From Magallana gigas (taxonomy: Eukaryota): a stretch of DNA of 64,000 nt. Positions 28,199 to 62,954 of the stretch are shown piece by piece. The position numbers and the translations under genes are program-made. A model generated the notes under the pieces. It worked only from the letters and a program-made list of their open reading frames with translations. It did no database searches and was not told the origin of the DNA. Numbering within the stretch: the stretch's first letter is position 1; each line of letters begins with the position of its first letter. The stretch covers positions 29,884,001 through 29,948,000 of the forward strand of contig NC_088862.1 of the NCBI RefSeq assembly GCF_963853765.1. Direction: 5' to 3'.

Positions 28199-28398
28199 NN
28201 NNNNNNNNNNNNNNNNNNNNNNNNNNNNNNNNNNNNNNNNNNNNNNNNNNNNNNNNNNNNNNNNNNNNNNNNNNNNNNNNNNNNNNNNNNNNNNNNNNNN
28301 NNNNNNNNNNNNNNNNNNNNNNNNNNNNNNNNNNNNNNNNNNNNNNNNNNNNNNNNNNNNNNNNNNNNNNNNNNNNNNNNNNNNNNNNNNNNNNNNNN
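28199..28398. other. Assembly gap (200 N)
   Basis: Run of N. Confidence 1.
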
Positions 28399-39970: not shown

Positions 39971-41497
39971 ATAAAACATAACTCAGCTGAGAGGTAAGTA
40001 CTTTTTTTTATTAACCTGTTTTGTTTACAATCAGAATTCAAAATGGCCGCCAATTTACTAGTACTCCTGTTTGTCACCACCCTGTAGATTTATTACCTGC
40101 ATATGAAGGCAGGTGTTTACTAATTCATAGTTATTTTGATGACCGACAAAGTCAAAGTGCTAACAAACTTCTAATGTATAACTCTACATATACATTGTAT
40201 CCATCAAAAATAAAACTAATATGTAATTTGGGAAATTATATTTCGTAAATCATTTGAACTTCGTAAAGTATGTAAAATGATATACTTTATGAGTTCTACT
40301 TTATACAGATTCGTAGACAAATGTATCAAAAAGAGTAGCTAATTATAATGGAACAAAAACTTGAAACGAACTTGAAAAAATCATTTGAAGAAACAATGAC
40401 AGGAACTAGGAAAATGAATATTACGTTTACTGCAGTTAAGGTAATTTACTACATCAACACTAAAACTAGTACTTGTACTTTTTTAAGACACTAGGTCACA
40501 CCCCCCCCCCCCCACTTTTATTGACATATAAAAAATTGAATTATCATGGAGTTGCCCCCCCCCCCCCCACTTATGAAAATAAGGAAATTAGGAGTAAAAT
40601 TGAAGTTATAGAAACACTACGCGTCATGCTACTAGTTCTGAAACAGTAACACTTTCATGATCATGTAAATTTCTGTCAAAATTTATTTCAATAGCCAGCA
40701 TCAGTGTACTTTAATTGTAGGTGTTGATATGCTTGAACTACATTTAAAATTAAGTAAACAATATATCAGGTTTTCAAGTTGTACTACTACAGAACGTAAC
40801 ACACGAGGACAGCAGCCAATATATACAAATAGAACGTGAAACAAGTAACCATGGCAGCAGCGTTCGTTTTGTTAGGTTCGTCATCATATGTCGCAAAGAC
40901 GCGCGCAGGTCCTCCACTTCCGTCAGCAATGTTCAGAACTGGAATGTAAATCGTACTTCCGCTTTCCGGTACGTTATCAAGATTGGCCACATTTTCAATC
41001 CCCACAACGTTGTTTTTCCCCAGTAGCGTGTGGCAAGGGTAGGTCGAACTCATTCCGTAATCTGTAGAGGGCGTGTCGACCCCAACAGCGTTGATTTGGC
41101 GCTTGTTTATCAACCATGTGACGGCGTCCTCATGCCAGCTCGGGAAGTGCAATGTAGAAATATCTGTGGGTTCGGGGGACCCAAACACGAGAGTTTTGTT
41201 CGGGTACTTGCTCGACCAACCGGAATTCATTATGGCGACAGCGCGTCGTGGCATTTCTCCGTATTTCTCCTCCCACATCAATAAGTCGTCAACAGTGACC
41301 CTTAAAGAAAGAAGGAAAGAAATGTAATTGTAATCAAAGTACTGACAGAACTGATAGACGGAGGCATCATTTCGGAAGAAACTATATGATTTTTTTTTAT
41401 TTAAGGAAAAACAGCGCGCTTACTGCTTATCATGTTAGAATATTCGCGAAGCGGTTTAGTTTTCAGGTTGATATCAGAGTTAGGTAGATAATATTAA

Positions 41498-42815: not shown

Positions 42816-45325
42816 GAAACGTATAATACTTGTCTTTTTTATTTATTATTTATAATTATAATATAAAACAAATGTTCATTGTTTATTGATATAATAATAT
42901 TGCAATGTATACAAAGAATAGTTCACTCACTGGCGCCAAAATCATCCGTGCGTGAAATTATAGTTATGTTTTTAAAGTAAACGAGTATTAATAATAATTT
43001 ATTCTACATGTATACTTAATGATATCATTATACATTTTTTACTTTATTAACATTGGAATAATTCAGTCAATCTATTTTTTCAATCACTGTTCATGGAGTC
43101 AGTGTTGTCAAATGTCAGTATTTTCAGTATTGTAAATCTATTTTATTATTCTTACAGCTTTTTACTAAACGCGTAGTATACTATATAGACCATACTACCA
43201 TGAATAAAGAAGAACATCTACAAAAGCCGGAGTTGGTATCAGTACACTCGCTGACAGATATTATTTAGTAACGAAATCATTAGATTTATTTTTTTAATAG
43301 AACTCATCGCCGCCAAAAAAATATTTTTATCTGTTGAGGACTGATCATCCCATATACACAAGGTCACAGACGTCATAATAAATAATATAGTAAATAATTG
43401 TAGAAACGTGCTTTAGAACTTTTGCTACCTGTAATCCGGATTGGTTGCGGCCTTAAACTTGACATTTATGATGACTCCAGCTCCGTACAAATTTTCCATG
43501 GGGATTTGATCGGTTCTCCACATTCCTTTTACTGTGTGAACGGGTGCGTCTATGTGAGTGCCCATGTGTTCAGGCATCGCAAAGTGATTGTTTTCAAGCC
43601 TTTGAAAAAAGATAGAAATCTTTTTACAGTCATTATCATAAACTGCTTTATTTCTATTCTCTTTTGAGTGAAGTTACACTCGGGTTTAGTGAACATGTTT
43701 CTTCGTGGGTGTAGGCTATGCCTGTCCACTTCTCAAAAGAGATAACTTTATTTCTTGTCCGGTGGATAGGTCGTTTTCCACAGTAATATAGACATATAGC
43801 GTTTAATCTTAAGCAATAACCGTGCACGTTAAGTGTTCATAAAAACAGGAAAAATACTGTTTTATAATAGCTCCTAGACACCAAAGCTGTCTCTGTTAAT
43901 ACAGACGAGTACTTCGTATGAACAAATAAGTTTTGATTTTTGTTTGGTCGTCCAACAAGGCCATAGTTTGGATAAGCTTCCTATGAATTATTGGATTTTT
44001 TCCTCTGATTGGAAAAACATGCATACGGTAAAATCATTTTTACTCGTGTGGGTGGGTCAATGTTCGTGGGTAGCCAAAGTTTTCCTTGTACTGTAACGGG
44101 GATAATTTTTGATAAATATAAATAAATGATTGTATTTACTAGGTTCATGGGGATGTAAATCCGTTGACAAGTGGTACCCACAAAAGCCGTCCCCAACACA
44201 GAATAGTGAGTTAACAGTACTCAGAACCAAACTCAGAGAAAACACCTATTGAAATTATATAATTGCCTATTCAGAAAAGACGGATAACATTCCTTATGAA
44301 ATAAAATATTTAATGCCAATTCTCATGACAAACATGATAACGAAAGAAAACAAACATTTCATCTATAATTGAAAAGAAATTATACTGAATTTTTTTAGGG
44401 CTTGGAGCAATGAGCGATTGGCTAATTTAGATTTCAACCTTGTCTAGAAGAAAAGGTGAACAGAAAGAAATTGCATATGAGAAACTGGGACACAGATTTG
44501 TCAAATTAAGTCTGAATGGTTCATTGCATACAGAAAAACCTCCTTTGTTACATTTTACGGCGACCTAATTCTTTGACATCGGGCGTACCTTATGCATCCA
44601 TCTCGGCCATGCAGTTACCAAGGTTAATGAACCGTGAAATCAATTAATGTGACATTCAGGGAATTTCTATTTGGCCAGGGAAGTTACACTCGGTTTTCGT
44701 GAACATGTAAATAGACTGTGACAGCCACTCACCAATGAATGCAGTTGCTGTATCATCAATACTTTATATTTAGTTACTAAATTTTTAATTTAACTTTTAA
44801 TACTGTTGTTATCGATGATAAATCGGTGACCAAGAAAAGTTTTGTTTGCGAAGGGGCGGGGGTCCAATTCCAAATTTCAGCAAATTTAAGAACTGAATTA
44901 ATTAAGTTTGAAATATCAAGGGGTCCGCTCTCCTTAGATCCGCACCATTAATATGATAAATGCTTGTTTCAGTTACAAACTGATCCCTAAATATTGCCTT
45001 GGGCCTTAAAACCTGTAAGTTAGTCAACCGTCGAAGACTGCACGTGAACTTCATGAATTTCTATAAAGGTCAAATTTATATAATTTTATTTTGATTTGTG
45101 AACTGTTTTTCCCGATAAGCATACAAACTCGAAATAAGAATAAGTCATGCACAAATAAACGTATAAAATATATAAATTTTGTCCCTTTTTTACGCATATT
45201 AAGACTTAAAAGTTAACCTCAGTAAAATAGTTACTAAAGTGCGGACAGAATTTATTCCCCCTTATAGACCTACCATTAGCAACCGTGTGCTGTCAACTTG
45301 GTAACAGTATTTTTTGTCGACCTAG

Positions 45326-45416: not shown

Positions 45417-45634
45417 TGGTTTGTGCATGCAATAAACTAACCATAACTTATAAGTCTCAGAATATCCCCGGAACAGTTGCGTAAAGTTATAAGACGGGTT
45501 TGAGGGCCAAGTAACGGAGTCCCTCTTTGCTTATAGCTCAGATCCACGATTCTAGGCACGGTCTGGACCAAATGGACCGCCGTCGCAAAGAAAAGAACAC
45601 AGAAGTTGACGTGGTGTGCCATCACTAAGCCGCG

Positions 45635-45650: not shown

Positions 45651-46069
45651 TACTCTTTCGATGAAAAACCTGTACCTCTCGATTTGCTTCAGTTAACATT
45701 CAGCTGTTCCGTTCCGCAAAGCCAGTTTTTTTTTCACGCACACAGAAAGTTTTCACTTTCAGGTATCTTGATGTATAAAGTATGGCCTACGGGCCCAAAG
45801 AAACCAACTTAAAAACCATTGTTGCAACCCCTGTTAAAATAACACAACAGTGACTATTAAAATGAATTATATTAAAAGTGGTTTGCAAGGTATTTCATTG
45901 GAAGAACCCCTTCATACCACTTTTGAAATACAACTACTATCAATTTTTTTTACTCGTTGTTGGGAATGAATTTAATTCTTTTTAAATATTACTTTGAAAT
46001 CACTATCGAAACACAGTTGGAAAAGAAAGAAGTTGTACATCATTTTTGCAAACTGCAATAAACACTTTA

Positions 46070-47100
46070 AGCCCCTTTCACAATTCGCGCACGAGCGGAA
46101 GCGACAAGATATTCGTGCGGCCGAAAAAAAAAATAGATATGGTTCGTAAACTGTTGCCAAAAATAGTTGCATATGAAATGTAAAGGCATTGAATCGCGTG
46201 TGGATGCGACTGCTGTACAATGAAAGCGAGTGTTGTAAGATTATGAGATAGGATCGCACGAATGACTAGATGATCTGACGATTGAACGTGCACCAATGCG
46301 ATAGGACGTGCAGTGCTCGTCCAATCATGTGTTTCACCCCACGAATGCTCGTGCGAGTCAGAGTGGGTATATATACATGTACCGCCCGTTTCCGACACTT
46401 TTCAATAGAAATAGTTGAAAAGACCACCCAATAAAATAAGAAAAGCATCAGCCAAAATCAAGGTCAATTGTGGCCTGAAACATATATCCTTATACAGTGT
46501 ATACTGTATAAGGGAACCATTCGCCCCGTTTTATTTCCGCTCATTTCACTGTTTTTATCAGTTAACGCATAAAGACTTAGCGAATTCCAATGTCTTATAT
46601 TATCTCTCTTTTACCACAACATTGTTGGGGCGAGTTCTAGACAAGCCAAACCCGTAAGTAGAAGTAAAAATGTAACAGGGCGAAAATAACCCTGTATCCA
46701 GTAAATACTAGTGGCAAAGCATGAAATCTTGCAACAATCATAAAACGTTGCAAGATTACATGAGACACGTTGAGCAACAGTCTCATGATCGCACAGTAGA
46801 TGCATAAACTGCTGTAATTTATTTTACGATCTTTAAAAGTTGTGCATCGCTCTTGCGAGTGCACAAAAGGTTGTAAAACATTCGTAGTAATTTTCGTGCG
46901 TTGCATTGCAGAAGTTCAGATCGCATTCGATAGCGTCTGAAAGGTTTGAATGTCCAGTATTTTGAGGAAACTTGACGCAACCACATAAACGCATGGAAAG
47001 AATGCGAGAGCTCGTGCAACGCATGCGATAGCACGCGAAGCCAAAACATTCCTATTGAAAAATTTTGTAAAGTGCTCGTGGGCCAATTTTGAAAGGGGCT
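46070..47100. mobile_element. PIF/Harbinger-type non-autonomous element
   Basis: TTA/AGCCCCTTTCACAATTCGCGCACGAGC ... GCTCGTGGGCCAATTTTGAAAGGGGCT/TTA: TIRs with a 3-bp TTA duplication. Confidence 0.85.
46504..46701. mobile_element. TA-target MITE nested in the Harbinger-type element
   Basis: TA/CTGTATAAGGGAACCATTCGCCCC ... GGGCGAAAATAACCCTGTATCCAG/TA. Confidence 0.8.
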
Positions 47101-47260
47101 TTATCTCACGAACATTTCCAAAAGTACAACTAAGGAGTAATAGACTTGTATATTTTAGGGTAATAACCTAGACTATGAAATTAATGTACCAATGTTAGGT
47201 TTTCACTGTTGTGCAGAAATAACCAATTCTTGCAGATTTACATACATATAACATTGATTT

Positions 47261-48959
47261 CATATTTTTCCTTTACCTTTCTCTTTCTATAGTTATTTCA
47301 TGTTTTATGAAAATTATTAATTATTAGTACAAGGGTGAACACTTTGTAAGTTGCCAGGACTTCTATTCAACCCCCGTGTATATTGAATATACAATAAAAT
47401 ATGTATGTTCAAACCAATTAAACACAACTAATATTATAATAGAAATAAATCATGTCGTTAACTTTTAATCAGAGTGGGGGATATTAAATTGGAGTTTGTC
47501 CATCCGTCTGACCGTTCCCGTCTATTATTTTGTTTGTGTGTAACACTTTCGTTAATCACAACTGAAACAAATTATTTCAGTGGTTGATTATGAATTTCAT
47601 TTTAAGAAATAATTTTCAACAACTATTAAAATACAAAAACCATGAAATAATTTATAATGTATCTTATTAAAATTATTATTATTGAAATACAGGTGACACT
47701 CAATGGCTCGAACTTCGATCTCTCAAAGTTCTTGATCTCTCGAAGTGAACTCACGGTCCCGATTTTTTTTTTATATAACTAAGCAAATTTAGTCTTGATA
47801 TCTCTCGAAGTTCTTGATCTTTCGAAGTAAAACTTGGGTCCCGTGATACATATTTCATTATTTTTCACTCTTGATAACTCGAAGTGGTTGCTGTGTACAC
47901 ACGCGGCCGATCAAGCGTATAATTATAGCTCCGCGTGGACATACCTAGATGGTTGAGTGAACTCCTTGGGGCTAGCGTCGTAGTGTTAATTGGTTGATTA
48001 CGTAAGTGACACTACCCCTTGCTTCCTTCAAAGGGTAGATAGGTAATTTGTAACTGATCTATTAATTTCAACAACTTGTGAAAGTTACGGTAAACTGTTC
48101 TTTATTTAAAATATTCGAACGTTATGATTAAGAAAACACAATATGATTAAATCAAAATTTTAACGGGAAAATATACTTAATAACCACAAAACTAAGTTCT
48201 GTATTGTTTAAATTGAAGTAATGTAGCACAAAATACATGTACGATTGAAATCATGTCCGACTGGCCTTCCATGTTATAAGTAAAAATTTCCGGCTACTAT
48301 AATTTTAGAATTTAGGAAGACCATAATAGAAAGTTGTTACACACAGACGGAATGATGAACATAAAATGACATGCATTTCATTCACTATAATATTGAAATT
48401 CTTCATTTCAATAGTGGTTGTAATGAAACGCATCCTTTACCACTAATGAACTAATTTTTTTCAATAGTGGTCGTACTGGTATTTCAATCGTGATTGCAAA
48501 GTGATTCTAATTATAAATTACATTCATAACCACCATTAAGATAATCTATTTCAATAATGGTTGTATAACAAAATAATATATTATGAGGTATTTAAATGTT
48601 TGTAATATTTGTTGCAATTTTTTCTTAAAATAAAATTCATAGCTAACCACCATTTCTTTCTGTTGTGATTAAGGAAAATTTTACACCCAAACAAAATAAT
48701 AGACGAAAGACGGTCAGACGGATTGTCAAACCCAATTATTATCCTCCCAATCTGATTAAAAGTAAACGACAGTATTTAGTTCTATAGTTGTTGTGTTTAA
48801 TTGGTTTGAACATATTTTATTGTATTCTTAATATATAAGGGTTTGAAAAGAAGTTCTGGCAACCCACAAAGTGTTCACACTTGTACTACTAATAATTAAA
48901 AATTTTCATAAAATATGATATAGCTATAGAAAGAGAAAGGTAAAGAACGTAAAATATGC
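47261..48959. repeat. Long imperfect inverted repeat (arms about 47261-47688 and 48548-48959)
   Basis: The reverse complement of the right arm aligns co-linearly with the left arm, e.g. TTTACCTTTCTCTTTCTATAG, TGTTCAAACCAATTAAACACAAC, CCGTCTGACCG, GTCTATTATTTTGTTTG. Confidence 0.85.
47690..47890 (+). mobile_element. 5' part of a CAG..CTCGAAGT-repeat MITE
   Basis: TA/CAGGTGACACTCAATGGCTCGAACTTCGATCTCTC with repeated TTGATCTCTCGAAGT. Confidence 0.6.
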
Positions 48960-49114
48960 AAGTCTATAATACCTAGATTTTGTATTTGAAATTGTTCGTT
49001 TGATAAAGTGTTTCTTGCACTTGAAAATAGTTAGCAAAAATGATATACAATTTCTTTCTTTCCAAATGTGTTTTAAATGTGATTACAGAGTAATATCTAT
49101 ATAGGAATTTATTA

Positions 49115-49505
49115 CCAACTACACTTGAAAAAATAGTTTTAATAGTAGTTGTATTTCAAAAGTGGCTGTATAGTGATTCTTATAATGAAATACATCCCCA
49201 ACCACTATTGAAATAATTAGTTCAATAGTGGTTTTATTTCATTAGTGATTGCAAAGAGATTCTTCTATTGAAATACATTTCCAACCACTATTAAAATGAT
49301 TTATTTAAATAGTGGTTTTATTTCAGTAGTGATTGCAAAGAGATTCTTCTATTGAAATACATTTCCAACCACTATTGAAATGATTTATTTAAATAGTGGT
49401 TTTATTTCAGTAGTGATTGCAAAGGGATTTTTCTAATGAAAAACATTCCCAACCATTATTGAAATAATTTATTTCAATAGTGGTTTTATTTCAATAGTGG
49501 TTGAA
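49115..49505. repeat. Satellite-like array, about 84-bp unit, about 5 copies, each unit with an internal palindrome
   Basis: CCAACCA(C/T)TA recurs at about 49198, 49281, 49365 and 49449. Each unit holds AACCACTATTGAAAT..ATTTCAATAGTGGTT. Related units at about 48395-48560. Confidence 0.9.
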
Positions 49506-50559
49506 ACAAACCATATTCAAAAGGTAAAATGCATGAATTGTTCTTTACTGAATAAAAGCATATCTGAAAATTTTAGCAAGATCTGATGGTCTCTGATACA
49601 AAGTACTTGAGGTCAAGACCACGTTTTTGTTAACACATCAAAATAAAGTGAAATAATTAAGCATGTTTTACATTGGTGCCACATATAATGTATATACAGC
49701 TAAAGAGTTGAGTAGAATTAGGCAATGACTAATTGGACATAACCCCAATGACGGTATCATTGAGTGACCTTGTGATCCGAAATTTTAAACAAAGAGGCTT
49801 GAAATTCACATCTGCCTTGTTAAATAAAATTTTTAAGATATGGTTTGTTTAGCTATAAACTAATGTTTTGTAAAGAAAAAAAATCATTTTACCTTTTTAA
49901 TTTGTTTTAGTTCCCTCGTTTTTCTTTAGTACAACTTCTCTACAAAAAGAGATCAAAACAGTCTAAAAAATGGCCGCAACCATCGATCCTTAACACATAA
50001 GAGGGTAGTTTAAATATATTTTATTGCTTTGAAACAATGCTTTTGATTTGATCTTCAAAATGATTAGACACAATTCCTTGACAAATTCAAAATTACAACT
50101 CAGTGAAATGCAAAATGTCTTATAAAAATGTATATGAACTAACTGTGTATGAAGGCAGGCTTACTATACGTATGCATAGTTATTTGATGAACAAAGTCAA
50201 AATGCAAATAAACTTCTAATAAATAACTCAACATATACACGTAACAAAACTTCTAGATGTTCACCCTCATAAATAGAAGAAAAAAAAGTTGGAAATTACA
50301 AAATAAGATAATCTGAGATTTTTCAACATTTTGTAACTGATATGTATTTTCATCTATAGCACAGATAAAAAAAGACACTGACAATTGAAAGCAGTTACTC
50401 GTAACGAACTTTTAAAACAATAAATTAAATTGTTATTTTTCTGCGCATCCTTAAAATGATTGGAATTTTTTTTGTGTGATTGATATTAGTCTATAGTGAT
50501 TGTTTCAAAAGAAAAGAACTTTAAAATGACCAATAAATAAATAAATAATGAAAAAACGA

Positions 50560-51300
50560 CAATAACAAATCGTGAACCATCTCAAAAATCCATAAAACGA
50601 AATACAAATTCAAAGCAGAGCAATTTACACGGACCTCCAAATAGATAGAAGTAGGATCAGGTGCCTAGCTAGGAGGAGTGAGCATCCTCTGTTGACCGGT
50701 CACAACCGCCGTGTGCTCTTTGTCATAATAGGGGAAACAAATCGGAAAAGTCCGTAGACAATTAGGTGATTTTAATTATGGTCCAACAATTAGTATGAAA
50801 AACGTCAGTCAGCATGCGACCCAGGGAAGATTATACTTGCTGACAAGGTCGTTGTATCGACCATGGAACTTACGAAAAAATGACATCAAGCGAGACTGTT
50901 GATAGTCCTGTTTTATCTCCTTTTTTTCAGTAGCTTGCTTCGTCTTAGAAACTGAAATACGAAGAGCATGCCCTTGCGTATCGAATCAACTGAGAGACAA
51001 AAACACCATATGCAGGTGATGAAGGTTTACTGCTACATAAGTAAGGTGAGTCGACTATAGAAAAATTGAAGTCATCTCGTTTATCATAAAGTTTTGTTGT
51101 TAGGTTACCATCAATGTCCATGTCTAGTAAAATATCCAAATATGAAACAGATGACGCAGACTCTGTGGTGTCTTTTTTTTCAAGTTCACTGGGATATATC
51201 GAGTCAACGTCAGTATGGAAATAACAATTGTTAATTGAAAATACGTCGTCGAATGTTGAGTTGAAGGCCACAGCGAGTGATATATTTTTTTTCACGTACA
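50560..51300 (-). mobile_element. 5'-truncated Penelope-like retroelement
   Basis: AFNSTF---DDVFSINN (YIDD motif deleted), IYPSELE.KDTTES..SYLDI..TKLYDKRDDFNFSIV..AYGVFVSQLIRYARACS, then SRLMSFFRKFHGRYNDLVSKYN. Confidence 0.9.
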
Positions 51301-51829
51301 ATTTTTTTTAATAAATTCGGCTTCATAAGAAACAAAAATAGATATGCTGAAAATGGAGCACAAATAAATCAGGTGAACATCAGATTTGTTGGAATATGGG
51401 TATATATAATGTTCCTATGACAGTGTGTTCTCACTATATATCTACTATTCTTTTAATTTGTGTAAATGTTTTAATATTTTGCAAGCCGAAAGAAACAGTC
51501 TTTTAATATAATGTGTTATAGAAGAAACATCTTTTCCATCGGCAACCTTAAAAAAAGCCTGAAAGCTCTAAGCGAAATTCAACCTAAAGGGAAGCGTTCG
51601 TGATATTTAGCAAAGGTCAAGGTCTCTGGTTGCAACCAGAGTCAAGATCATTATATTATTCTTAACAATTCTGAACTACAGTTATCAAAGTATCAGGCTT
51701 GTGAACTGCAGATCTCTAATTCAGTTCGCCTGGGGCATATATTTACATACTAGCAGTTCCGAGTCTTTGTCGCTGATAACTCTACAAATAGTTTTTGTAC
51801 TGTAAAATCCAACAAATTCAAATAATATA

Positions 51830-52019
51830 CCGTATATCCGTTTTTTTCGCTTGTCACAAAATTTGCGAAAATTGTGAAAATCTGTACCAATTTTAATTTG
51901 CGGCAGTCACTTTTTACGATTTAAAAGGTTTGTTATAAAAAATGATACAGGATATAATTTTTGCGTATTCCAATACTTGCGATATAAAAGATTTCGCGAA
52001 AAAATTTCCGGATATATGG
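51830..52019. mobile_element. TA-target MITE
   Basis: TA/CCGTATATCCG ... CGGATATATGG/TA with TTTGCGA subterminal motifs. Confidence 0.8.
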
Positions 52020-52134
52020 TATTGTTGGGGCGGGATCAGGGTTTGCATAATTAAAAGAAATGGAAATTTCCAAACTATGTCAATAATCTAATATTTAATA
52101 GTATAACAGCTGAAATTATGTAAATATCAGCGTT

Positions 52135-52370
52135 ATAGAACCATTCTTTGAATATCATAATTATAGTGATACTTTCGGGCTTTACTGGATTTGACCACTC
52201 CCGACCGAAATGATCACCTCAAAATACTCAAAGAATGATTCCTTATTTCTTTAATTTATAGTGAATTAAATTTCTTAAAAAACCTGTCTATCCAAAATTG
52301 CACATATTTTCCTTTATTTGATGTCTCATGCTAACCTTCACAATCAAGTGAATTTCTGTTGATTTAAGAA
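52135..52370. mobile_element. TAAGGAATCATTCTTTG-family hairpin element
   Basis: CATTCTTTGAATAT ... ATACTCAAAGAATGATTCCTTAT inverted arms with CTTTCGGGCTTT in the loop. Confidence 0.65.
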
Positions 52371-53365
52371 AGTATTTCCAAAGTGTTGCGAACCACATTA
52401 AGGGGCAAAGGACATACATCACGTGACTATCATTACAATGATGCTTTGATGTGTTAACTCTATTATGACGTCTTAATTGATTTGATTGTATATTGCTATG
52501 ATGTCATTTATTCATTGTGACGTAGTAAACGGCTCTAAAGTTATCATTGTCAAAACATGAGCTGGTGGAAATTTGACATTTTTAATTGTAGAATTGTAAA
52601 TGTACAAAATCTTAAGTGGTAAATGTAATCAGATATCTATTCTGATAATGATATGTTCATGTTAATTGATAAATCTAAATAATGCATTAATTTTTTTATG
52701 GTCTCAAACAGAATTAGTAAAAAAAAAGTCACAATTCCAGAATAATGGGTAGGGGTCATTCCTAATGAAGTATCTCTCTTAAATGCCTAGAAAGTTGCCA
52801 TGAAAATTTTATGTTTAACATGTAAAGCACATGCTTAAGTTGATATATGAAATTTTTAAAAAGATTTCATTGATAAATTTGTATGTGCCATCATATTTTG
52901 TTCAAATTTAGAATCAGAAACTTCAAATTTGAAGTGCTAATTTCAGCAATCTATTGATAAAATTATGATATTGCTATGTAAAAAAAAGAAATATTGTAAA
53001 CAATTTGAAATTTGTTTTTCGTTCTCAAAATTAATAAATATGATTTGGAAAAATATTTCCATCAACTTGAATAATTATTGAGAAAATTGAAATTGTTACA
53101 CAAAATTCATAATGCCAGAAATAGGGGATAATTCCTATCAAAATATCCCCCTTCAATGGAAAGAAAGTAGTCATGAAAATGATATACATTGTATGTTGTT
53201 GTAGACATCTTAATTTAAATGTGTTACAAAGAAAAAAAAAATCATTGACAAATAATTTTTACACTGCAACCACCTGTTTTCCACCTGTAGGTATTGATAT
53301 GCTTTAACTACATTTAAAATAAAGTAAACATTATATCAGGTAAATTTCACTACATAGTTGTACAA

Positions 53366-56300
53366 TTACAGAACGTTACACATAAGGACGGCAGCCAATA
53401 AGTACAAATAGATTGCAAAGCAGGTGACCATGGCAGCGGCGTTTGTTTTGCTAGGTTCGTCATCGTATGTCGCGAAGACGCGCGCAGGTCCTCCACTTCC
53501 GTCAGCAATATTCAGAACCGGTATGTAAATAGTGCTTCCGCTTTCCGGAACGTTATCCAGATTGGCCACATTTTCGATCCCCACGACTCTGTTTTTCCCC
53601 AGTATCGTGTGGCATGGGAAAGTCGAACTCATTCCGTAATCTGTGGAGGGCGTGTCTACTCCAACAGCATTGATTTGGCGCTTGTTTATCAACCATGTGA
53701 CGGCGTCCTCATGCCAGCTTGGGAAGTGAAATGAAGACTCATTGGAAGGTTTGGGGGACCCAAACACGAGTGTTATATTCGGGTACTTACTCGACCAACC
53801 GGAATTCATTATGGCGACAGCACGTCGTGGCATTTCTCCGTATTTCTTCTCCCACATCAATAAGTCGTCAACAGTGACCCTTAAAGAAGGAAGGGAAGAA
53901 ATGTGATTGTAAAAATGACCTACTGGTACAAATGAAACAAATCTAACACTTATGAAAGGTTCAATTTCGCTTACTTTAATAAATCAATCATGCAAAAAAT
54001 AAAACAAAGTGCGTTTCACTTGCTTAAAAAAGAAAACCAATATCTGAATTAAAATTTAAGCGTTCAATAGTGGATTTACCTTAGTCAAGTATACCTTTAT
54101 CGACACAAATGGAAAAAAAAAACTTGTCAGGATTTTCTATTTTCCATACTACATCAGTGTAAAAAAAGAAAATATTTTAACTTTGTGTTTTAATATTTGT
54201 GTCGTTTTAAATATTTGGCCATGTTGGTTGAAAAAAAAATCTTCATGGAAATTTGGTAGTTATTGGATTGATATTTTTTTGGCAATAAAATCAGGTTTTT
54301 GCCAAAAACTTCATCTGTTGAGGATTGATCCTCCCAACTATATCTAAAAAGTCACAGATGTCAGAGTGAATAATTGTAGAAGCGTCCTTTACAACTTTTG
54401 CTACCTGTAATCCGGATCGGTTGCGGCCTTGGACTTGACATTTATAATGACTCCTGCTCCATACAAGTTTTCTATGGGAATTTGATCGGTTTTCCACATT
54501 CCTTGTACTGTATGAGCGGGTGCGTCTATGTGAGTACCCATGTGTTCAGGCATCGCAAAGTGGTTGTTTTCCAACCTTTGAAAAATAATATAGAAATCTT
54601 TTTACAATCATTTTCATAAACTGCTTTATTTCTTGTCTCCATTTTGCAAAAGAACTTGCAAATAATGACTATTTAAACAATGAAATGCTTTCTTTGGTGA
54701 TGAATCCGGGAAATGAAGATGGCGACGTTGCAGAATTTTTCTCTGCAATGATCGATGGATTCCTTCATACCTTCTTATTGTTTATATTTACTTCTTTATT
54801 TTAACAAATTAATCAATTGGTTGTAAAAAGTAAGTAAAATGAACTAAATTATTGTAATATACATCAGGACGTTAACTAAAAGAAACAGCTAAATTCGAAA
54901 TTCGTATTTTGAAATTTCGAATTCGAGTCTGACATCATCATGATTATTTAATGCAGTCTGTAATTTTTCTTAAGTCGCTTTAGGTTTCGACCAATCGATA
55001 AACAGGGCGTGTAGATTTCTGTCTGGCTGTTTCTATAGACTATTAGTTAACGATGTTTCCGTAATAAAAGGACGGAATCATACTAGGTAGATGTAAATTT
55101 TTACATTTAAAGTATTTTATATTTTTCAGTGTCTTAATTTATTTTCATTATCTTCAAGCTAGTAGTTTATTTATATAAGGAATCATTCTTTGAGTACTAT
55201 GAGATCCTAAATTCGGTCGAGGGCTTTATTATAGATTTGACATTGCTCCGACCGAAATTATTACCTGTCTCGTAATATTCAAAGAATTACATATGTATTC
55301 CTCGTTACTTATATTTATATCATTTCCAATTTTAACACTTTAAAACATATTAAATTAAAGCCACTATTCTTTTCATGTAGCCCATGATCTGTATTACTAC
55401 GCGGCGCAGCCAATACCTTTTTCGGTTATGCTATAAGACACGCCCATTTTGTGTCGCTCATCTTTCATGAAGTGATTGGTTTTTAGAGTTCAAAATTGAT
55501 TTGTTATGTTATCATAGACAAAAACAGTTGAAAATGTAAATGTATGCAATTCAAAACAAGACAGCGTGTTGTATCACATTTTGCGCAATGGATATCAGTC
55601 CACGGACCCTGGAATGTTTAACGGCTTAGTCGTGCGTTTTGGGGGAAAATAGATACCAATCTGACTATAGGAAAAAATACAAATTCAGCGTTTGTGTTTC
55701 CTTTTAAATCAGCATACAGTTTGCAGACAGTAAAAAATCTTTTAATGATAAAAATAAACGTTTTGTTTTACTATATTGGCACGTGGGTAACAGTATATGT
55801 TATCTGTTTATAAAAAGGGGGAAAACCTCCGTTTTAGATAAGCCCTTTGGCACAGAAACTGTCTCTGTTGAAACAATACTTTGTATGAACAAAAAAGTTT
55901 TAATTTTAGTTTGTTCGTCCAACGAGGCCATAGATTGGGGCTCGATACACTTAATATTAATTCTTCAATTTTTTCTATTTTTTTTCTATTACTATTTGAA
56001 GTGGGAAAAATGCTTATTAAGAACTAAAATAAAAAAAACCCATTGAAATCACACGTGTGCCTATTTAGTTATTTATGTGACAATATAAATGTTTTATTTT
56101 TAAGGCAAACGGATAAGTAACGTTTTGTTGTAATCTACGTTTAAGTAAAGATTAAAATGAGGTTGTCTTTGCATGGTAAATAAAGTAGTGCAAGGCGCAA
56201 TGCGTGCGCTGATAGTAAAATTTGCCGTATGCCGGATATAGACACAATTGTGATCGGCCGCAGGAGAGACTGGGACTCGGACAAATCAAATTCAGTATGA

Positions 56301-59300
56301 ATGGCTCATCGCATGCAATAAAGCTTTGTTTACATTTTGTCGGCGACCTAATTCTCTGAAATATCAAGGATACATCGGGCCTACTTTATGCATTGATCAA
56401 GGTTTGTGAAGCATGAAGTCAATGTGTGACAAAGAGGGAATTTCTGACTCTCTAAATATTTCGGCGGGGAAGATACCGTCAGTCTTTGTATACATGTAAA
56501 TAGATTGTTAGAACCATTCACCAATGAGTTCAATTGCTGTTTCATCAATAATTAATAATTAATTATTAGATTTTCAAATGAACTTTAAAAATCGTTGCTA
56601 TCTGTGAAACCTAAATCGCCGATCCAGAAAAGTTTACCAGGAGGAGGGGTGTAAGATCAAAATTTGTTTTTCCGGATTAGGGGTGTCCGATGCCAGATTT
56701 CGGTAATTATATTAAGTTTAAAATACCTAGTGGTCCACCCTCCTTAGATCCGAATTATTAGTATTAATATGATAACCCTTGTAAAATCACAAACTGTTCC
56801 CTGAATATTGCCTTGGACCTTACGGTACTGATCAGACCCAACCTAACAACCCGGGTTTACTTGCTAGGTGTACTCTGGGTTGACTCTGGGTTTACTTTTT
56901 GAAAATTTCGGTCCGCTCGGGGTTTACTTTGGGTTTACTCGCGGTTTATTTTTGGGTTTACTTGCATATTGCTTTTGAGGTCAACAGTACGCACTGAAGT
57001 GTGTAGCAGACCCGTCTTTTATCTTACCATCCTACTGCATGTAATTTCTGCCCCTTGTATATTCCGAATACACACTAAGCGTCTGTTTTCAAGGGTATAC
57101 TTTTAACTGGTTTTCTCCCTGTGTCCACTCTGGGTTTACTTTTGGCATACTCTGGGTTTATTCTGGGTGTACTCTAGTAAACCCGAAGTAAACCCAGAAT
57201 AAACCCAGAAAGTAAACCCAGGGTTTAGTTGGGCTTTACTTTCTGTTAGGTTTGGTCTGATCGGTACTGTATATATATTTATAAATTTCTTTACACGGCG
57301 GGCGTAAAAATTTATATGACAACATGGCGGACGTAACGTTATTTGAGTTGTTTTTTACACAAACGTTCAAACATACCTTTAATTTTTAAGCCCTAAAATA
57401 TTTAGAGTGACCCCCCTTTGCCCGTGACGTAATAAACCGATCTTATTAAATGGCAACCAGACAACTGACGAGAAATAGTACAAAATTAGAAAATAACCCT
57501 ATTTGTTTAATTGTTATATATTATCTGTTGTTGTTTATATATCAAACTTTAGGTCCTCGACAAAACAAAACACTTATTAGGTTTTTTACTGACTGTTTAC
57601 AGATTTTTGTGGGGTCGTTAAGTCCATNNNNNNNNNNNNNNNNNNNNNNNNNNNNNNNNNNNNNNNNNNNNNNNNNNNNNNNNNNNNNNNNNNNNNNNNN
57701 NNNNNNNNNNNNNNNNNNNNNNNNNNNNNNNNNNNNNNNNNNNNNNNNNNNNNNNNNNNNNNNNNNNNNNNNNCTTTAAAAGTTAACCTCATAAAAAAAA
57801 TCTTCCAATGTGCGGGCAGAGTTTTATTCATTTTTTTTTCGACCTAAAAATTGAGAGAGTGAGAGAGCATGGAGTTTGTGCATGCAATAGACTAACCATA
57901 ACATAAGTCTCAGAATACCCCCGGTACAGTTGCGTGAAGTTATAAGACGGGTTTCCAGGCCAGGTCATGGAGTCCTTGTTTTGTTTATAGCTCAGATTCA
58001 CGATTCTTGGCACGGTCTGGACCAAATGGACCGCCGTCGCAAAGAAAAGAACACAGAAGTAGACGTGGTAGGCCATCACTAAGCAGCGCTTCTATATATT
58101 TTACTACTCTTTCGATGAAATCGTGTATCTCTAGATTTGCTCTATTTAACGTTCACATGTAAATGTAAACTCTTTTTCACGCACACCGAGCCTTAGCTAG
58201 GGGATAGAAAATACGCAACGAGTTCGATAAAAATCATATTCCATTGTTAATGATGAGAGAACCTTTTAAAGACACGTATATGTATTTTGTTAAAAATCAA
58301 TCTTTTCGATATTTAAACATTTTAATTGTGATCCGGACAACACATTTACTACATGACCTCGACAACATACGAAAAGAAAAAAGTGCCTTTAAGATTAACA
58401 AACAAGTATTTGATTTCTTAACATGATATTGAATATTCATCACAAGATTTAAGAACATACACCGCAAAATTATCGAATATACATCGTAAGATTTAGAAAA
58501 ATTCATTACAAGATTTTGAACATCCATCATTAGGGTTTAAACATACATCAGAAGATATTGAATATACCTCAAACTATTTTCTTATAAAGCAACGTTTTTC
58601 ATGCGTTATACCCCAACCTGGATTACAAAATGTTAATTAAATCAGTTTCTGCAAAGACATGCTGGAACGCGTTTTGAACAAAAATAATATTACAACTTCT
58701 GCACCGGTAAGTACTATCCAATAAAAGATGAAACAAAACAGACTGGAATCAAGGCAAAGCCAAATTCCCAACCAGAACCGTTATTAAGTAAAATAAAGTT
58801 TATTGCTCTGTTCTGAATTGTAAAACTTTGAAAATTACACATAAGACGACAATGTTTTAGGATGATTGAATTGACTAGTTGCGTATTCAATCCAACATTA
58901 TTAACTACCTTTGTTTAATACTCTTAACAAAAAAAAAATGATAACATACTATGTTGAGCATTTGATGATATATTACATGGACTGCTAGGACATATTGCGT
59001 TTGGCGGATACAAAATTGCTGTGTTGACGTTGTAATTATCCTGCACGGAATTTTAACTTTAGGAGACTGGGTGGTCTTCAACTCAACCATTAGATCTGTT
59101 GTATACTTTGACAAATACTTAATGAAGAAAAATTAAATAGTTTGCTTTAAAATTTGATTATTTTCCTATATCCTTTTACCAAATATTTTGCATTACAAGA
59201 TTAGGTGATCAAAACAGTATAAGAATAGCCATGACCATGACTCCCTTTTAAAGAAGACGCCCACTCACATGGCATTTTCAACATTAAGGTATATATAACG

Positions 59301-60010
59301 TTTTATTATATCTCTGTGAATATTTTCTATGTAAAATTGCAACGAATAACCACGATATTCTATCTAACCGTTGAATAGTTTCCGTGATATCTTTCCGTGT
59401 TAAATAGTCATCGAAACAATTCACCGGAGGCATTCGATTTCCCGCCTTCTTCTTTTTTTTTTTTTAACTCGGAACACCTTTGACGTAATCCGATCGCTAC
59501 ATTAAGTCCGATAACTCTAATTTGTTTATCGTCATGAAATTCTGCATCGCGGACAAATAACGTTTTTTTTTTCATTATAATAAAATACCTATTCACAGAC
59601 TATTTGGACGATAGCAAGTTTTTTGTCTCCCTCAACAGCAACTATTTTCCTCGGCTTCGCCTCCTAAATAACTGCTCTCTTGGGGGACAATTTACTTTTT
59701 ATCGTCTTTTTCTTGTCTATCGTTATTTTGACATTGGATCTGATAAATGGTTAAATTTACCATTCACACATACATATTTGTTAGAAGTAGAGAGAATTGC
59801 ACGATAAAGAGAGTACATTTATACAAACCATGAATTGTCATAAAATCCTCGGTAAAGCACGGTGAATTGATACGGAGGGTTTCCAGGCCAGGTAAGGGAA
59901 GCATTATTTAGTCTATGGCTTAAATCCACAATTCTAGGAACAGCTTGGACTAAACTGACCAAAGCAACCATGCAGAAGAGAACATTGCTTATACAATTTT
60001 TAGACATCAT
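53366..60010 (-). CDS. Cyclase-family (kynurenine formamidase/isatin hydrolase-like) protein: intact 288-aa model using exon 1C plus the copy-B body
   Basis: Exon 1C 60010-59829 (182 nt, signal peptide then PRIVDLSH..TWPGNP, phase-2 donor TG/GTTTGT), exon 2 54575-54405 (EHMGTHIDAPAH) and exon 3 53879-53366 total 867 nt with no stop. The splice junction itself is inferred. Confidence 0.65.
55179..55560 (+). mobile_element. TAAGGAATCATTCTTTG-family hairpin element
   Basis: AAGGAATCATTCTTTGAGTACTATGAG ... CTCGTAATATTCAAAGAAT arms, followed by a body shared with the copy at 8163. Confidence 0.65.
56823..57269 (-). mobile_element. GTAAACCC-repeat MITE (copy 2, inverted relative to 7473-7895)
   Basis: TA/CGGTACTGATCAGACC ... 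GGTCTGATCGGTACTG/TA. The central core is the reverse complement of the copy-1 core. Confidence 0.9.
57628..57773. other. Assembly gap (146 N)
   Basis: Run of N. Confidence 1.
57897..58076 (-). pseudogene. Cyclase exon 1B, out of phase with exon 2
   Basis: MAYHVYFCVLFFATAVHLVQTVPRIVNLSYKQNKDSMTWPGNPSYNFTQLYRGYSETYVM. It is 180 nt, so the donor is phase 0. It lacks the AA seen in copy A (ACTTAT-AA-GTTATG), and splicing to exon 2 gives a stop after 9 codons. Confidence 0.7.
59608..59706. mobile_element. Degenerate hairpin element with GCTTCGC (GCGAAGC) tip
   Basis: GACGATAGCAAG..TTGTCTCCC ... GGGGGACAATTTACTTTTTATCGTC arms around CCTCGGCTTCGCCTC. Confidence 0.6.
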
Positions 60011-61356
60011 ATCTAAATCCTTTCCTTCTCCTTTTTTTTAAAATCAATGTAGCGGTATCTTCTCTCACCTGTACAGGTAAGTTTAATTTTAAATATAATG
60101 AATTCAAGCATGAATGATGAAAACATTCCATTCAATAATCAGAAAGAAATTTTTTTTATAGCCAAAAAAAAATATCTGACCTAATAAGGAAACGTGTTAT
60201 TCATGACATTTCTGTGTACTGAGACATGAAAAAATAGTTAGGTTTGCAAACTTAAGGGTTGAAATAAAAATCAAAGAAAGCAAATTTATCTTTTTGATAA
60301 AAGGCGGATCATAACAGATGGTAGGAGAGATCCGGGTTCAGTAAACCTATTGGGTGTGGGAATTTTAATTAATGTATGACCAGGTCTACATTAAAAGGCC
60401 ATGATACGATGAGTTTAATATATCAATTCTTAAGCTGCAAAACTGTAAAACAAATGTATAATAAGCAGACTGACAGAGCTACGGCATTCTATCTACATTT
60501 TAGTTACTTTTTCAGAGCTGCATTCTGTACTAGAGAAATGTGCATTAGTTATTAATAATATACATCTACAGATATTTGATTGATTCTGTATGCCAATGTC
60601 TTATCCCCTGAATGTGAGATATCATGCTGACATGATCATCCAATTGTTGTTTAACACAAACTATCCATGATAACGGTCAATGCCAGACCACGTATTACTA
60701 GTATTTGGTGTTTTCTCATATACTATTAATGGAAACACTGTAAAAGTTTTTTTCGAAGATACTTCATTTTTGTCTTATACCGCGGTTTTAATTTTTATAA
60801 AACTATCAACCACGCAAGTTTTGGAAATTTTTCCAGTTATGCATATGAAAAAAAACCCCGTAAATACATTGTATAACAAAATTTATAAATCGTACCATCG
60901 TACAAATGTATAAATTTGAAGTGATGTGCATGTACAAGAAAACGAAGTTTTTCTTAAATGAATGGATCAACAAGCAAGCATCATCACAAGGAATAAAAAT
61001 TTATTGTAGTTTATTATAGTGTATTGGCGTATACATTACATGCATTGTCTTAGCATAAATTTAACAGTAGTTAATAATAGTTGTTGGTACCGTTGGGAGG
61101 TGGGTTATATAAATATAGAGTATAAAGTGAAAGAAAAAATATCAAAAAACAAACAGAAAGTAATGTTATAAACTGAATTTACGCTTATTTAGTCTGATGG
61201 TTAAGTTATCCCCCTGGTTAAAATATTCGTAAACATATTTACCATGTTTTCTTAGCGAATATAGAGTCAAAATTAAGTAAGTCACAAGATTTTACCATAC
61301 TTGGTCGTACATCGACGTATTTCTTGATATATAATTTTCTTAACAAACCTATACCT

Positions 61357-61474
61357 AAAAAAGCTCACCGGGATATGAAGTTGGTTGTTCACGTGATCAA
61401 ATTCTGTGAAGCCCGAAGGACACTCGGTAGATTTGATCACGTACCAACCAACTTCATATCCCGGTGAACTTTTT
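61357..61474. mobile_element. Hairpin element with CCGAAGG tip
   Basis: Arms AAAAAGCTCACCGGGATATGAAGTTGGTTGTTCACGTGATCAAAT and ATTTGATCACGTACCAACCAACTTCATATCCCGGTGAACTTTTT, near-perfect over about 44 bp. Confidence 0.8.
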
Positions 61475-62437
61475 AACATTGCTGTTTAATCTTATATTCA
61501 CGTTTGAAAAAGAAAAATCGCCAGAACTGTTAAAATTACCGATATTTTAAGTTTAATCCAAGCGACAAGCAATAAGCGCTGCTGTGATTGTGACGTCTTG
61601 AAAAAGTTCATGCAGAATTGAACGTTTTTGCTATTTAACAGGTTCATATAAGGAAAAATATTTGCAGATGTAAATATATAACCGTGAAAGGTAAGCCTTT
61701 TTAATTTCTACCCGTAAACTTTGGTGAAATCAATTAGACCAATCTTATAAAAATAAATATAGATAAAACATTTTTTTTCATTAACCGACTCCGGGTAATA
61801 CCACAAATCACTAAAACCATTTGACAAAGTGTGTTCTTGACAAAACAAATCCAGCTTGATAACATGTTTTTCAAGTCATATTCATAAATTGTTTTTAAAG
61901 ACAATTTTGGGAGCGTAAATGATATACACATGTACACCTACATGAAGAATTATATGTACATGTATCTTTAGAAAAAGTATATATTTGTAAAATGCTTACC
62001 TTTCACCTTTATATATATACATTTGCAAATATGTTTCCTTATATGAACCTGTAGAATAGCGAAAACGTCCAATTCTGCATGAACTTTTCATGGCGTCATG
62101 ACGTTACAATCATAGCAGCACTTATCGGTTGTTGCCTGGCTTATTGTAAACCTAAAATATTGGTAATTTCAATTTTAAATTATGTTATATATACGGGTAT
62201 GCGGGTACTTTCAGTTATACCCCAATTCTTTATGATGCATAAACCTGTTTTATTGCCTTGAGGAAGACTTTTAAAAAATTAAAAGAACATACAGTCACTA
62301 CATTATACATAACTTAAGTAGCTAAAGGAATAAGATTGCAGTTATATTAAAAGGTATTTAAAAATACCAACATTAAAGACAGCTGTAAAACGTACAGTGT
62401 ATAACATCAGGTTTTCTATTTCCAGAAAAATGTACCA

Positions 62438-62954
62438 CTAAATTACAACTTTACACACGAAAACGGCTACAAATAAGTGTACATAAACCATGGAGGTAGT
62501 AACCATGGCAGCGGCGTTTGTTTTGTTAAGTTCGTCATCAAAGGTTGCAAAAACGCGAGCAGGTCCTCCGCTTCCGCCAAAAAGGTTCAGGACCGGAATA
62601 TAAATCGTACTTCCGCTTTCCGGAACGTTATCCAGATTTGCCACGTTTTCAATTCCAACAATATTTTTTTGTCCCAGAATCACGTGACATGGCATGTTTG
62701 TTGTCTGTCCGTAGTCTGTGGAGGGCGTATCCACACCTACAGCGTTGATTTGACGCTTGTTTATCAGCCACGTAACCGCATCTTCGTGCCAACTTTGGAA
62801 GTGAAATGAGGAAACATTGGAGAGTTCGGGGGACCCAAACACTAGGGATTTATTTGGGTACTTGCTCGACCATCCGGAATTCATTATTGCGACAGCATGT
62901 CGTGGCATTTCTCCGTATTTCTCCTCCCACATCAATAAGTCGTCAATAGTGACC
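62438..62954 (-). CDS. Cyclase-family copy D, last coding exon; upstream exons lie beyond the window
   Basis: Acceptor TTTGAG/G GTC ACT, then VTIDDLLMWEEKYG..VGVDTPSTDYG..GIENVANL..GGSGGPARVFA and a hydrophobic C-terminus to the stop. Same phase as the other copies. Confidence 0.88.

What the first reader, a model, noticed from the sequence alone, without database searches (positions are those of the whole stretch)
53366..60010. Two first exons, one body: an orphan intact signal-peptide exon can rescue a frameshifted cyclase gene
Seen: exon 1C (60010-59829) is a divergent, intact signal-peptide exon with a phase-2 donor. There is no exon 2 or 3 in the gap-free DNA between it and exon 1B (58076). 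Exon 1B is 2 nt short and out of phase, whereas 1C plus exons 2 and 3 of copy B give an open 288-aa frame. Inference: either a variable-first-exon arrangement (alternative promoters feeding a common catalytic body, as established for UGT1A and clustered protocadherins) or a chimera formed when gene C lost its body. 1C could in principle also splice to exon 2A (43599), which has the same phase.
Basis: partly seen in the sequence, partly recalled or inferred. Interest (0 to 1): 0.72.

Follow-up and report, generated by a model that had tools for sequence, protein, structure and literature searches.

The report
Borrowed first exon on oyster hydrolase gene
In a tandem array of secreted hydrolase genes in the Pacific oyster, one copy has a broken first exon and sits just downstream of an intact first exon left by a lost neighbour. 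Joining that exon to the copy's body gives the only open reading frame, which RefSeq already predicts, but I found no RNA proof that it is used.

Summary
**Observation: confirmed.**
- Exon 1C (60010-59829) is 182 nt, intact and phase 2.
- Exon 1B (58076-57897) is 180 nt and lacks 2 nt.
- 1C+2B+3B gives an open 288-aa frame. 1B+2B+3B stops at codon 70.
- No cyclase-coding DNA lies between 1C and 1B.

**Gene and species.**
- The window is Magallana (Crassostrea) gigas.
- The 288-aa product is identical to RefSeq XP_065929211.1, "isatin hydrolase isoform X4". The model is therefore already annotated.

**Origin.** Genes F, E, D, B and A form a birth-and-death array.
- B is a full duplicate of A, including its own first exon.
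- 1C is most like 1E (81% nt, plus promoter-proximal DNA). It is the leftover head of a lost E-like copy.
- The C. angulata reference has the same layout, the same 2-nt loss in 1B and the same RefSeq model.

**The N run (57628-57773)** is intronic and hides no exon, judged by the gap-free C. angulata locus. I did not fill or read its letters.

**Use of 1C is unproven.**
- In three RNA contig sets exon 2B is spliced on both sides, but neither 1C nor 1B is covered.
- No transcript-derived protein starts with 1C.
- An older RefSeq model joins 1D to the same body.

**Verdict.** The chimera origin is well supported. A UGT1A-like variable-first-exon system is not. Interest is modest.

The parts
59829..60010 (-). 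Exon 1C: intact first exon. It encodes the signal peptide and the first strand of the catalytic domain. 182 nt, phase-2 donor.
   Evidence: It forms residues 1-61 of RefSeq XP_065929211.1. Its closest paralogue is 1E, at 81% nt.
60011..60199 (-). DNA just upstream of 1C, homologous to the DNA upstream of 1E. Putative 5'UTR and core promoter.
   Evidence: blastn: 59818-60057 matches ext 70211-70439 at 77%, and 60121-60199 matches 70542-70619 at 70%. Promoter activity was not tested.
54576..59828 (-). Predicted intron of the 1C-2B model, 5253 nt. It contains broken exon 1B, the N run and a high-copy repeat.
   Evidence: No cyclase-coding segment lies inside it apart from 1B. Low-depth RNA contigs fall at 58187-58463 and 58930-59356.
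57897..58076 (-). Exon 1B: the first exon that belongs to gene B, disabled by a 2-nt deletion 6 nt before its donor. 180 nt, phase 0.
   Evidence: Alignments. DNA contigs confirm it. C. angulata shares the deletion and has a further +1 insertion. All donors that would restore the frame are weak.
57628..57773 (.). Run of 146 N (assembly gap or masked stretch) inside the intron.
   Evidence: Its flanks are colinear with gap-free L004. I did not fill or read it.
54405..54575 (-). Exon 2B, 171 nt. It carries the metal-binding motif HxGTHxDxPxH.
   Evidence: An RNA contig of run X1 covers 54404-54576 with 1 mismatch and runs on into non-adjacent sequence at both ends, so it is spliced.
53366..53879 (-). 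Exon 3B, 514 nt including the stop. It holds the rest of the domain and a hydrophobic C-terminal tail.
45442..45622 (-). Exon 1A: the first exon of sister gene A. It is 181 nt, with 1 nt missing, and is frameshifted in this assembly.
   Evidence: It is intact in the older RefSeq protein XP_034317595.1.
43429..43599 (-). Exon 2A.
40787..41300 (-). Exon 3A.
62438..62954 (-). Exon 3D: the last exon of upstream gene D. Its exon 2 lies just beyond the window end and is broken by a 4-nt duplication.

Best explanation
**What the locus is.** It is a birth-and-death tandem array of three-exon genes. Each encodes a secreted, probably GPI-anchored, PF04199 metal-dependent amidohydrolase. RefSeq calls them 'isatin hydrolase-like'; they are kin of kynurenine formamidase.

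**What happened.**
- Gene B is a full duplicate of gene A and brought its own first exon, 1B.
- Exon 1C, together with its promoter-proximal DNA, is what remains of an older E-like copy whose exons 2-3 were deleted. That deletion left 1C 1.75 kb upstream of 1B.
- 1B later lost 2 nt near its donor, so transcripts that start at 1B hit a stop 9 codons into exon 2.

**How it would work.**
- A first exon has no acceptor. In a transcript that starts at 1C, broken 1B is therefore simply intronic.
- The 1C donor pairs with the next acceptor, which is 2B's. The product is the 288-aa protein that RefSeq lists as isoform X4.
- This is replacement of a first exon (a Lepore-type chimera), not a regulated variable-exon system.

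**Shown:** the anatomy, the origin, conservation of the layout, and the open frame.
**Inferred:** that the 1C promoter fires and that the 1C-2B mRNA is the working product.
For: **Frame.** Of the splice combinations tried, 1C+2B+3B is the only open one that uses a first exon lying between gene D and exon 2B. It equals XP_065929211.1, which is carried on a contig of the same length as this chromosome.

**Origin.**
- The A and B units are duplicates from about 80 nt upstream of the ATG to about 80 nt past the stop.
- 1C is 81% identical to 1E but only 63-64% to 1A and 1B. Its upstream DNA also matches E's.
- No remnant of a C body is found.

**Conservation in C. angulata.**
- The gap-free locus L004 has the same order.
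- Its 1C is intact, at 179 nt and phase 2.
- Its 1B shares the 2-nt loss and carries an extra frameshift.
- Its RefSeq model starts at 1C.

**Sequence constraint between the two haplotypes.**
- Body: dN/dS 0.23 (P = 5e-7).
- 1C: dN/dS 0.35 (P = 0.07).
- No frame-breaking indel occurs in 864 coding nt, against about 1 per 100 nt in the introns.

**Exon 1 is needed.** The Pfam domain starts at residue 28, and residues 20-61 align with solved isatin hydrolases.

**1B cannot rescue itself.** Every frame-restoring donor is weak.
Against: **RNA.**
- In three RNA contig sets no contig lies on 1C or 1B.
- One of them holds exon 2B spliced on both sides at depth 18.7. Its upstream partner is therefore neither 1C nor 1B at 92% likeness or more.
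- The tool warns that holes in contig data prove nothing.

**Protein collection.**
- Among 5.8 billion protein clusters, no transcript-derived protein starts with a 1C-type sequence.
- None carries a B-type exon 3.

**Other models and alleles.**
- An older RefSeq model joins 1D to the same 2B-3B body, so RefSeq's choice of first exon may be driven by the open frame.
- Transcripts from other oysters show an intact 1B-type exon spliced to a B-type body. Selection on the body could therefore act through such alleles.

**Gene conversion.** Site patterns in exon 3 are mosaic. Conversion can keep a body open and lower dN/dS without selection on this copy.
Confidence: 0.5

Rival explanations
1. Gene B is simply dead in this haplotype. 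1C is silent debris that happens to be still open, like the other relics in the array. The RefSeq isoform is a prediction that maximises the open frame.
For: - 1C shows no RNA coverage, and no transcript-derived protein has its N-terminus.
- Three of the five copies in this assembly carry small frame-breaking indels: 1A -1 nt, 1B -2 nt, 2D +4 nt. A decayed relic also lies upstream of F.
- Constraint on 1C alone is not significant (P = 0.07).
- Gene conversion can keep the body open.
Against: - 1C kept its start codon, frame, phase and donor in two haplotypes about 8% apart. Over the same time 1B gained a further frameshift.
- The body shows dN/dS 0.23 and no indel.
- Exon 2B is expressed and spliced in run X1.
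Confidence: 0.27
2. Cross-copy splicing. Transcripts that start at upstream copies (1D, 1F-2F, or 1C) read through the array and splice onto the intact B body. Nonsense-mediated decay removes the out-of-frame products. The B body would then serve several first exons, as a nascent variable-first-exon locus.
For: - RefSeq treats F to B as one gene. The older release has 1D+2B+3B (X1) and 1F+2F+3B (X3). The current release has 1C+2B+3B (X4).
- All three combinations are open in this assembly, while D's own exon 2 is broken.
- In run X1 the partner of exon 2B lies outside 54350-60100. Low-depth RNA contigs lie in the 1C-1B interval.
Against: - The RefSeq isoforms are predictions, and the older ones were made on another assembly whose layout I could not inspect.
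- No transcript-derived protein has a B-type exon 3.
- The acceptor dinucleotides of 2D and 3D are in place, and I see nothing that would favour skipping them.
- Each upstream copy has its own terminal exon.
Confidence: 0.15
3. Assembly artefact: the 2-nt loss is a consensus error, or exons 2-3 of gene C are hidden in the N run or were collapsed out of the assembly.
For: - An N run of uncertain nature lies in the locus.
- The array is repetitive and haplotypes differ strongly.
Against: - Independent DNA contigs match 57774-58120 and 59471-60100. Their only differences are one substituted letter and two small insertions, one of them TT behind 60031 upstream of the ATG, and none lies inside 1B or 1C.
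- The C. angulata assembly, which is gap-free here, has the same order and the same 2-nt loss.
- The N run lies downstream of 1B. Exons hidden there would not give 1C a body placed before 1B.
Confidence: 0.03
4. 1B rescues itself through an alternative donor or recoding.
For: Four GT sites would restore phase 2.
Against: - They match only 3-4 of 9 consensus positions, against 7 of 9 for the normal donor.
- Three of them would delete conserved residues.
- 1B shows no RNA coverage.
Confidence: 0.03

Closest known systems
Hybrid genes made by deletion or unequal crossover between tandem paralogues (haemoglobin Lepore delta-beta, CYP11B1/B2, red/green opsin hybrids). From my own knowledge.
   Same: The 5' part, with its promoter, comes from one array member and the 3' part from another. 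The DNA in between is lost. The product is a full-length chimeric protein.
   Different: The breakpoint lies upstream of the recipient's own first exon. Two first exons therefore stand in tandem, and the recipient's exon decayed afterwards or before. Expression of the chimera has not been shown.
Variable-first-exon loci (UGT1A, clustered protocadherins). From my own knowledge.
   Same: A first exon with its own upstream region, and no body of its own, lies ahead of exons it can join in phase.
   Different: - There is one intact exon and one dead exon, not a series.
- They come from different subfamilies and arose by accident of deletion.
- The other array members keep their own bodies.
- No alternative use was seen in RNA.
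PF04199 metal-dependent amidohydrolases: bacterial isatin hydrolases (PDB 5nmp, 5nnb, 4j0n) and kynurenine formamidase KynB (4co9). See PMC6117287 and PMC4243253.
   Same: - The Pfam domain matches at E = 4.8e-39.
- The HxG[T/A]HxDxPxH metal motif is present.
- The protein aligns over residues 20-255.
   Different: - The animal protein has a signal peptide and a hydrophobic C-terminal tail.
- It has GIEN where isatin hydrolases have the GLQC/GLAS signature, so the substrate is unknown (PMC6117287).

Membership tests
PF04199 'putative cyclase' / metal-dependent amidohydrolase | Match to the Pfam model above its gathering score | tested here: met
   P0099 scores 134.3 bits against a cut-off of 23.1, over residues 28-198 and profile positions 1-141 of 142. 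Exons 2 and 3 also match separately.
PF04199 'putative cyclase' / metal-dependent amidohydrolase | [quoted passage not shown] | tested here: met
   HMGTHIDAPAH is encoded in exon 2B, at residues 71-81 of P0099.
Isatin hydrolase proper | GLQC or GLAS signature next to the manganese site (PMC6117287) | tested here: not met
   The aligned position reads GIEN. The glutamate resembles the KynB I(L/I)E motif quoted.
Isatin hydrolase proper | Hydrolysis of isatin | not testable with these tools
   This needs an enzyme assay.
Variable-first-exon locus (UGT1A / protocadherin type) | A series of alternative first exons, each intact and without downstream exons of its own | tested here: not met
   Only 1C fits. 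1B is frameshifted, and 1D, 1E and 1F each have their own exons 2-3.
Variable-first-exon locus (UGT1A / protocadherin type) | Each first exon is seen spliced to the common exons in RNA | tested here: inconclusive
   No contig lies on 1C or 1B, and the partner of exon 2B is unidentified. Only contig data were laid, and these cannot show absence.
Chimeric gene from deletion in a tandem array (Lepore type) | The 5' and 3' parts trace to different paralogues | tested here: met
   1C groups with 1E at 81% nt. 2B-3B group with A at 89-90% and match E at only 75-78%.
Chimeric gene from deletion in a tandem array (Lepore type) | The donor's own downstream exons are absent | tested here: met
   tblastn at E<=10 finds nothing in 58077-59828, 60011-62430 or 45700-53300.
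Chimeric gene from deletion in a tandem array (Lepore type) | The chimeric mRNA or protein is made | tested here: inconclusive
   Only RefSeq predictions support it. There is no RNA support.

The most novel reading that the evidence does not exclude
In this haplotype three array members are each broken at a different exon (1A, 1B, 2D). The locus may still make enzyme because intact first exons of upstream copies (1C, 1D, or 1F-2F) are spliced across copy boundaries onto the intact B body, and possibly the A body. Nonsense-mediated decay would clear the out-of-frame products. That would be a variable-first-exon locus caught at its birth, and a way for a decaying tandem array to complement itself in cis.
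Probability: 0.12. Interest if true: 0.6.

Novelty: new member of a known kind. Interest (0 to 1): 0.3.

Why it matters
If 1C is really used, this is a clean natural case of a gene surviving the loss of its first exon by taking over the promoter and signal-peptide exon of a dead neighbour. The decayed original exon is still visible in the intron, and the same state is kept in two divergent haplotypes.

It also bears on annotation. Open-frame-driven gene models in polymorphic tandem arrays (RefSeq isoforms X1, X3 and X4 here) can join exons of different copies, and they need junction-level RNA support.

The enzyme itself is an uncharacterised secreted PF04199 hydrolase that has expanded in bivalves.

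As it stands, the model is already in RefSeq and the mechanism is of a known kind, so the value is modest.

Tried and rejected
**Assembly error in 1B: rejected.** DNA contigs and the C. angulata assembly agree with the window.

**Exons hidden in the N run: rejected.** The run is intronic and lies downstream of 1B. The gap-free C. angulata locus has no exon there. I did not read or fill the masked letters.

**Remnants of a C body: none found.** I searched with B-type and E-type queries at E<=10.

**Frame-restoring donors for 1B: all weak**.

**Search for transcripts that use 1C: nothing found.**
- The N-terminal region search found only the two RefSeq models and one unrelated protein.
- The exon-2B peptide search found only unspliced fragments.
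- A degenerate 1C/exon-2 junction pattern found nothing in JGI metagenome contigs. That collection holds few oyster transcripts, so the blank is weak.

**Read laying limits.**
- I had one call, limited to contig data.
- The flanks of the spliced 2B contig were not printed, so its partner exon stays unknown.

**Literature.** I found no paper on this family in oysters.

**Pairwise dN/dS as proof of function:** weakened by clear gene-conversion mosaics.
Full report
**1. What is there**

The window is G000:C10:29884001-29948000 of a 564-Mb, 29-contig genome. The proteins identify it as Magallana (Crassostrea) gigas.

The minus strand carries a tandem array of three-exon PF04199 genes. I extended the window with neighbouring DNA and use window-style coordinates throughout. 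In order of transcription the array reads:

| Element | Exon 1 | Exon 2 | Exon 3 |
|---|---|---|---|
| F | 78699-78518 | 75144-74974 | 74778-74244 |
| E | 70400-70222 | 69316-69146 | starts at 68995 |
| D | 66899-66718 | 64277-64103 | 62954-62438 |
| orphan 1C | 60010-59829 | none | none |
| B | 58076-57897 | 54575-54405 | 53879-53366 |
| A | 45622-45442 | 43599-43429 | 41300-40787 |

One further family member lies on another chromosome.

**2.

- 1C is 182 nt and intact. Its donor is ATG|GTTTGT, in phase 2.
- 1B is 180 nt, in phase 0.
- 1C+2B+3B is an open 867-nt frame of 288 aa. 1B+2B+3B stops at codon 70.
- Alignment with 1A and with two spliced transcripts shows that 1B lacks 2 nt, 6 nt before its donor.
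- DNA contigs from a public run match 57774-58120 without any difference, so the loss is real.
- No cyclase-like coding DNA lies between 1C and 1B.

**3. The N run**

The run at 57628-57773 lies in the intron between 1B and 2B, so the frame across it does not matter.

- Its flanks are colinear with a gap-free C. angulata locus (L004).
- In L004 the anchors lie 34 nt apart, and no cyclase exon lies between broken 1B and exon 2.
- I did not read or fill the masked letters.

**4. The model is already annotated**

- The 288-aa product is identical to XP_065929211.1, "isatin hydrolase isoform X4 [Magallana gigas]". That protein is recorded on a contig of exactly this chromosome's length.
- C. angulata XP_052682805.1 is the same kind of model.
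- An older C. gigas annotation, made on another assembly, has 1D+2B+3B (isoform X1) and 1F+2F+3B (isoform X3). It also has an intact gene A.
- RefSeq therefore treats F to B as one gene with cross-copy isoforms. These are predictions.

**5. Origin**

- B is a full duplicate of A. Homology runs from about 80 nt upstream of the ATG to about 80 nt past the stop. Exons are 88-90% identical and the alignable intron parts 68-72%.
- 1C is not part of that unit. It is 81% identical to 1E but only 63-64% to 1A and 1B. About 190 nt upstream of it also match E's upstream DNA.
- The B body is only 75-78% identical to the E body.
- 1C is therefore the head of a lost E-like copy, and the predicted protein is a chimera of two subfamilies.
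- The array holds other debris and lesions in this assembly:
  - 1A lacks 1 nt.
  - 2D has a TAGA duplication that creates a stop.
  - 3E has an extra A near its end.
  - A decayed relic, exon-1-like sequence joined to exon-3-tail-like sequence, lies upstream of F.
- Only F is canonical.

**6. Conservation**

C. angulata L004 has the same order over 18 kb: D, then 1C, then broken 1B, then exon 2, then exon 3, then the same downstream flank. Non-coding identity is about 83-92%.

- Its 1C is intact, at 179 nt and phase 2.
- Its 1B shares the 2-nt loss in the alignment and carries an extra +1 insertion.

Comparison of the two haplotypes gives these figures:

| Measure | Value |
|---|---|
| Body dN/dS | 0.23 (P = 5e-7) |
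| 1C dN/dS | 0.35 (8 non-synonymous, 6 synonymous changes; P = 0.07) |
| 1C divergence | 7.8% |
| Broken 1B divergence | 12.2% |
| Frame-breaking indels in 864 coding nt | 0 |
| Frame-breaking indels in introns | about 1 per 100 nt |

This favours a working gene that uses 1C. Two facts weaken the argument:
- Exon 3 shows mosaic site patterns typical of gene conversion.
- Transcripts from other oysters (L005, L006) have an intact 1B-type exon spliced to exon 2, with a 3'UTR that matches the B-unit flank. Working 1B alleles therefore exist.

**7. RNA**

I laid three RNA contig sets and one DNA set on 54350-60100.

- Run X1 covers exon 2B exactly (54404-54576, 1 mismatch, depth 18.7). The contig is 269 nt long and continues for 35 and 61 nt into sequence that is not adjacent. 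Exon 2B is therefore spliced at both ends.
- Depth on 1C and 1B is zero in X1 and X2, and 0.68 in one bin of X3.
- The upstream partner in X1 is thus neither 1C nor 1B at 92% likeness or more. It was not printed.
- Low-depth contigs lie in the 1C-1B interval.
- Contig data cannot prove absence.
- In the protein collection, no transcript-derived protein has a 1C-type N-terminus or a B-type exon 3.

Use of 1C therefore remains unproven, and the old 1D+2B+3B model stays a live alternative.

**8. Mechanism**

- A first exon has no acceptor. In a transcript that starts at 1C, broken 1B is just intron, and the 1C donor pairs with the next acceptor, at 2B. No regulated exon skipping is needed.
- Transcripts that start at 1B would hit a stop 9 codons into exon 2. 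I expect them to be lost to nonsense-mediated decay (inference).
- Donors that would restore the 1B frame are weak.
- Exon 1 is indispensable. The Pfam domain begins at residue 28, and residues 20-61 align with solved isatin hydrolases.

**9. The enzyme**

- P0099 matches PF04199 (E = 4.8e-39) and solved isatin hydrolases and kynurenine formamidases.
- It has the HxGTHxDxPxH metal motif.
- It has GIEN in place of the isatin-hydrolase signature GLQC/GLAS (PMC6117287). The RefSeq name therefore rests on similarity only.
- A signal peptide and a C-terminal small-residue stretch followed by a hydrophobic tail suggest a secreted or GPI-anchored enzyme (direct reading).

**10. Verdict**

- The anatomy is real and the chimera origin is well supported.
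- A UGT1A-like system is not supported.
- The functional 'rescue' is plausible but lacks RNA proof.
- The model is already in RefSeq.

Interest: 0.3.

Noticed in passing
just beyond the window end: G000:C10:29948103-29948277 (-), seen in L001: Exon 2 of gene D carries a 4-nt TAGA tandem duplication that creates an in-frame stop. The C. angulata orthologue (L004:6376-6546) is intact at 171 nt.
   Followed up: partly
window 45442-45622 (-): Exon 1A is 181 nt, with 1 nt missing at the KQNR codons, so gene A is frameshifted in this assembly. The older RefSeq protein XP_034317595.1 has it intact. It is probably a null allele.
   Followed up: partly
G000:C10:29952499-29952995 (-), L001: Exon 3 of gene E has an extra A (A4 to A5) about 25 codons before the end. 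This replaces the hydrophobic C-terminal tail with a charged one. It could be a real variant or a homopolymer error.
   Followed up: no
G000:C10:29966613-29966857 (-), L008: A decayed relic lies upstream of gene F. An exon-1-like piece runs directly into an exon-3-tail-like piece, with stops.
   Followed up: partly
exons 2-3 of A, B and C. angulata; transcripts L005 and L006: Similarity is mosaic. B-specific changes cluster at body positions 299-331 and 625-638. L006 and UniProt K1QML4 have an F-like exon 2 joined to an A/B-like exon 3. Both point to frequent gene conversion in the array.
   Followed up: partly
window 18284-21901 (+): A single open frame of 1205 aa with several C2H2 zinc fingers lies in the GC-richer part of the window.
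   Followed up: partly
window 56846-57613: A high-copy repeat sits inside intron 1 of gene B. Summed depth is 10^4-10^5 in DNA contigs, and it is also present in RNA contigs.
   Followed up: no
window 53366-53460 (-): The C-terminus has small residues (NAAA) followed by a hydrophobic tail. Together with the N-terminal signal peptide, this looks like a GPI-anchor signal.
   Followed up: no
window 28199-28398: A second run of 200 N.
   Followed up: no
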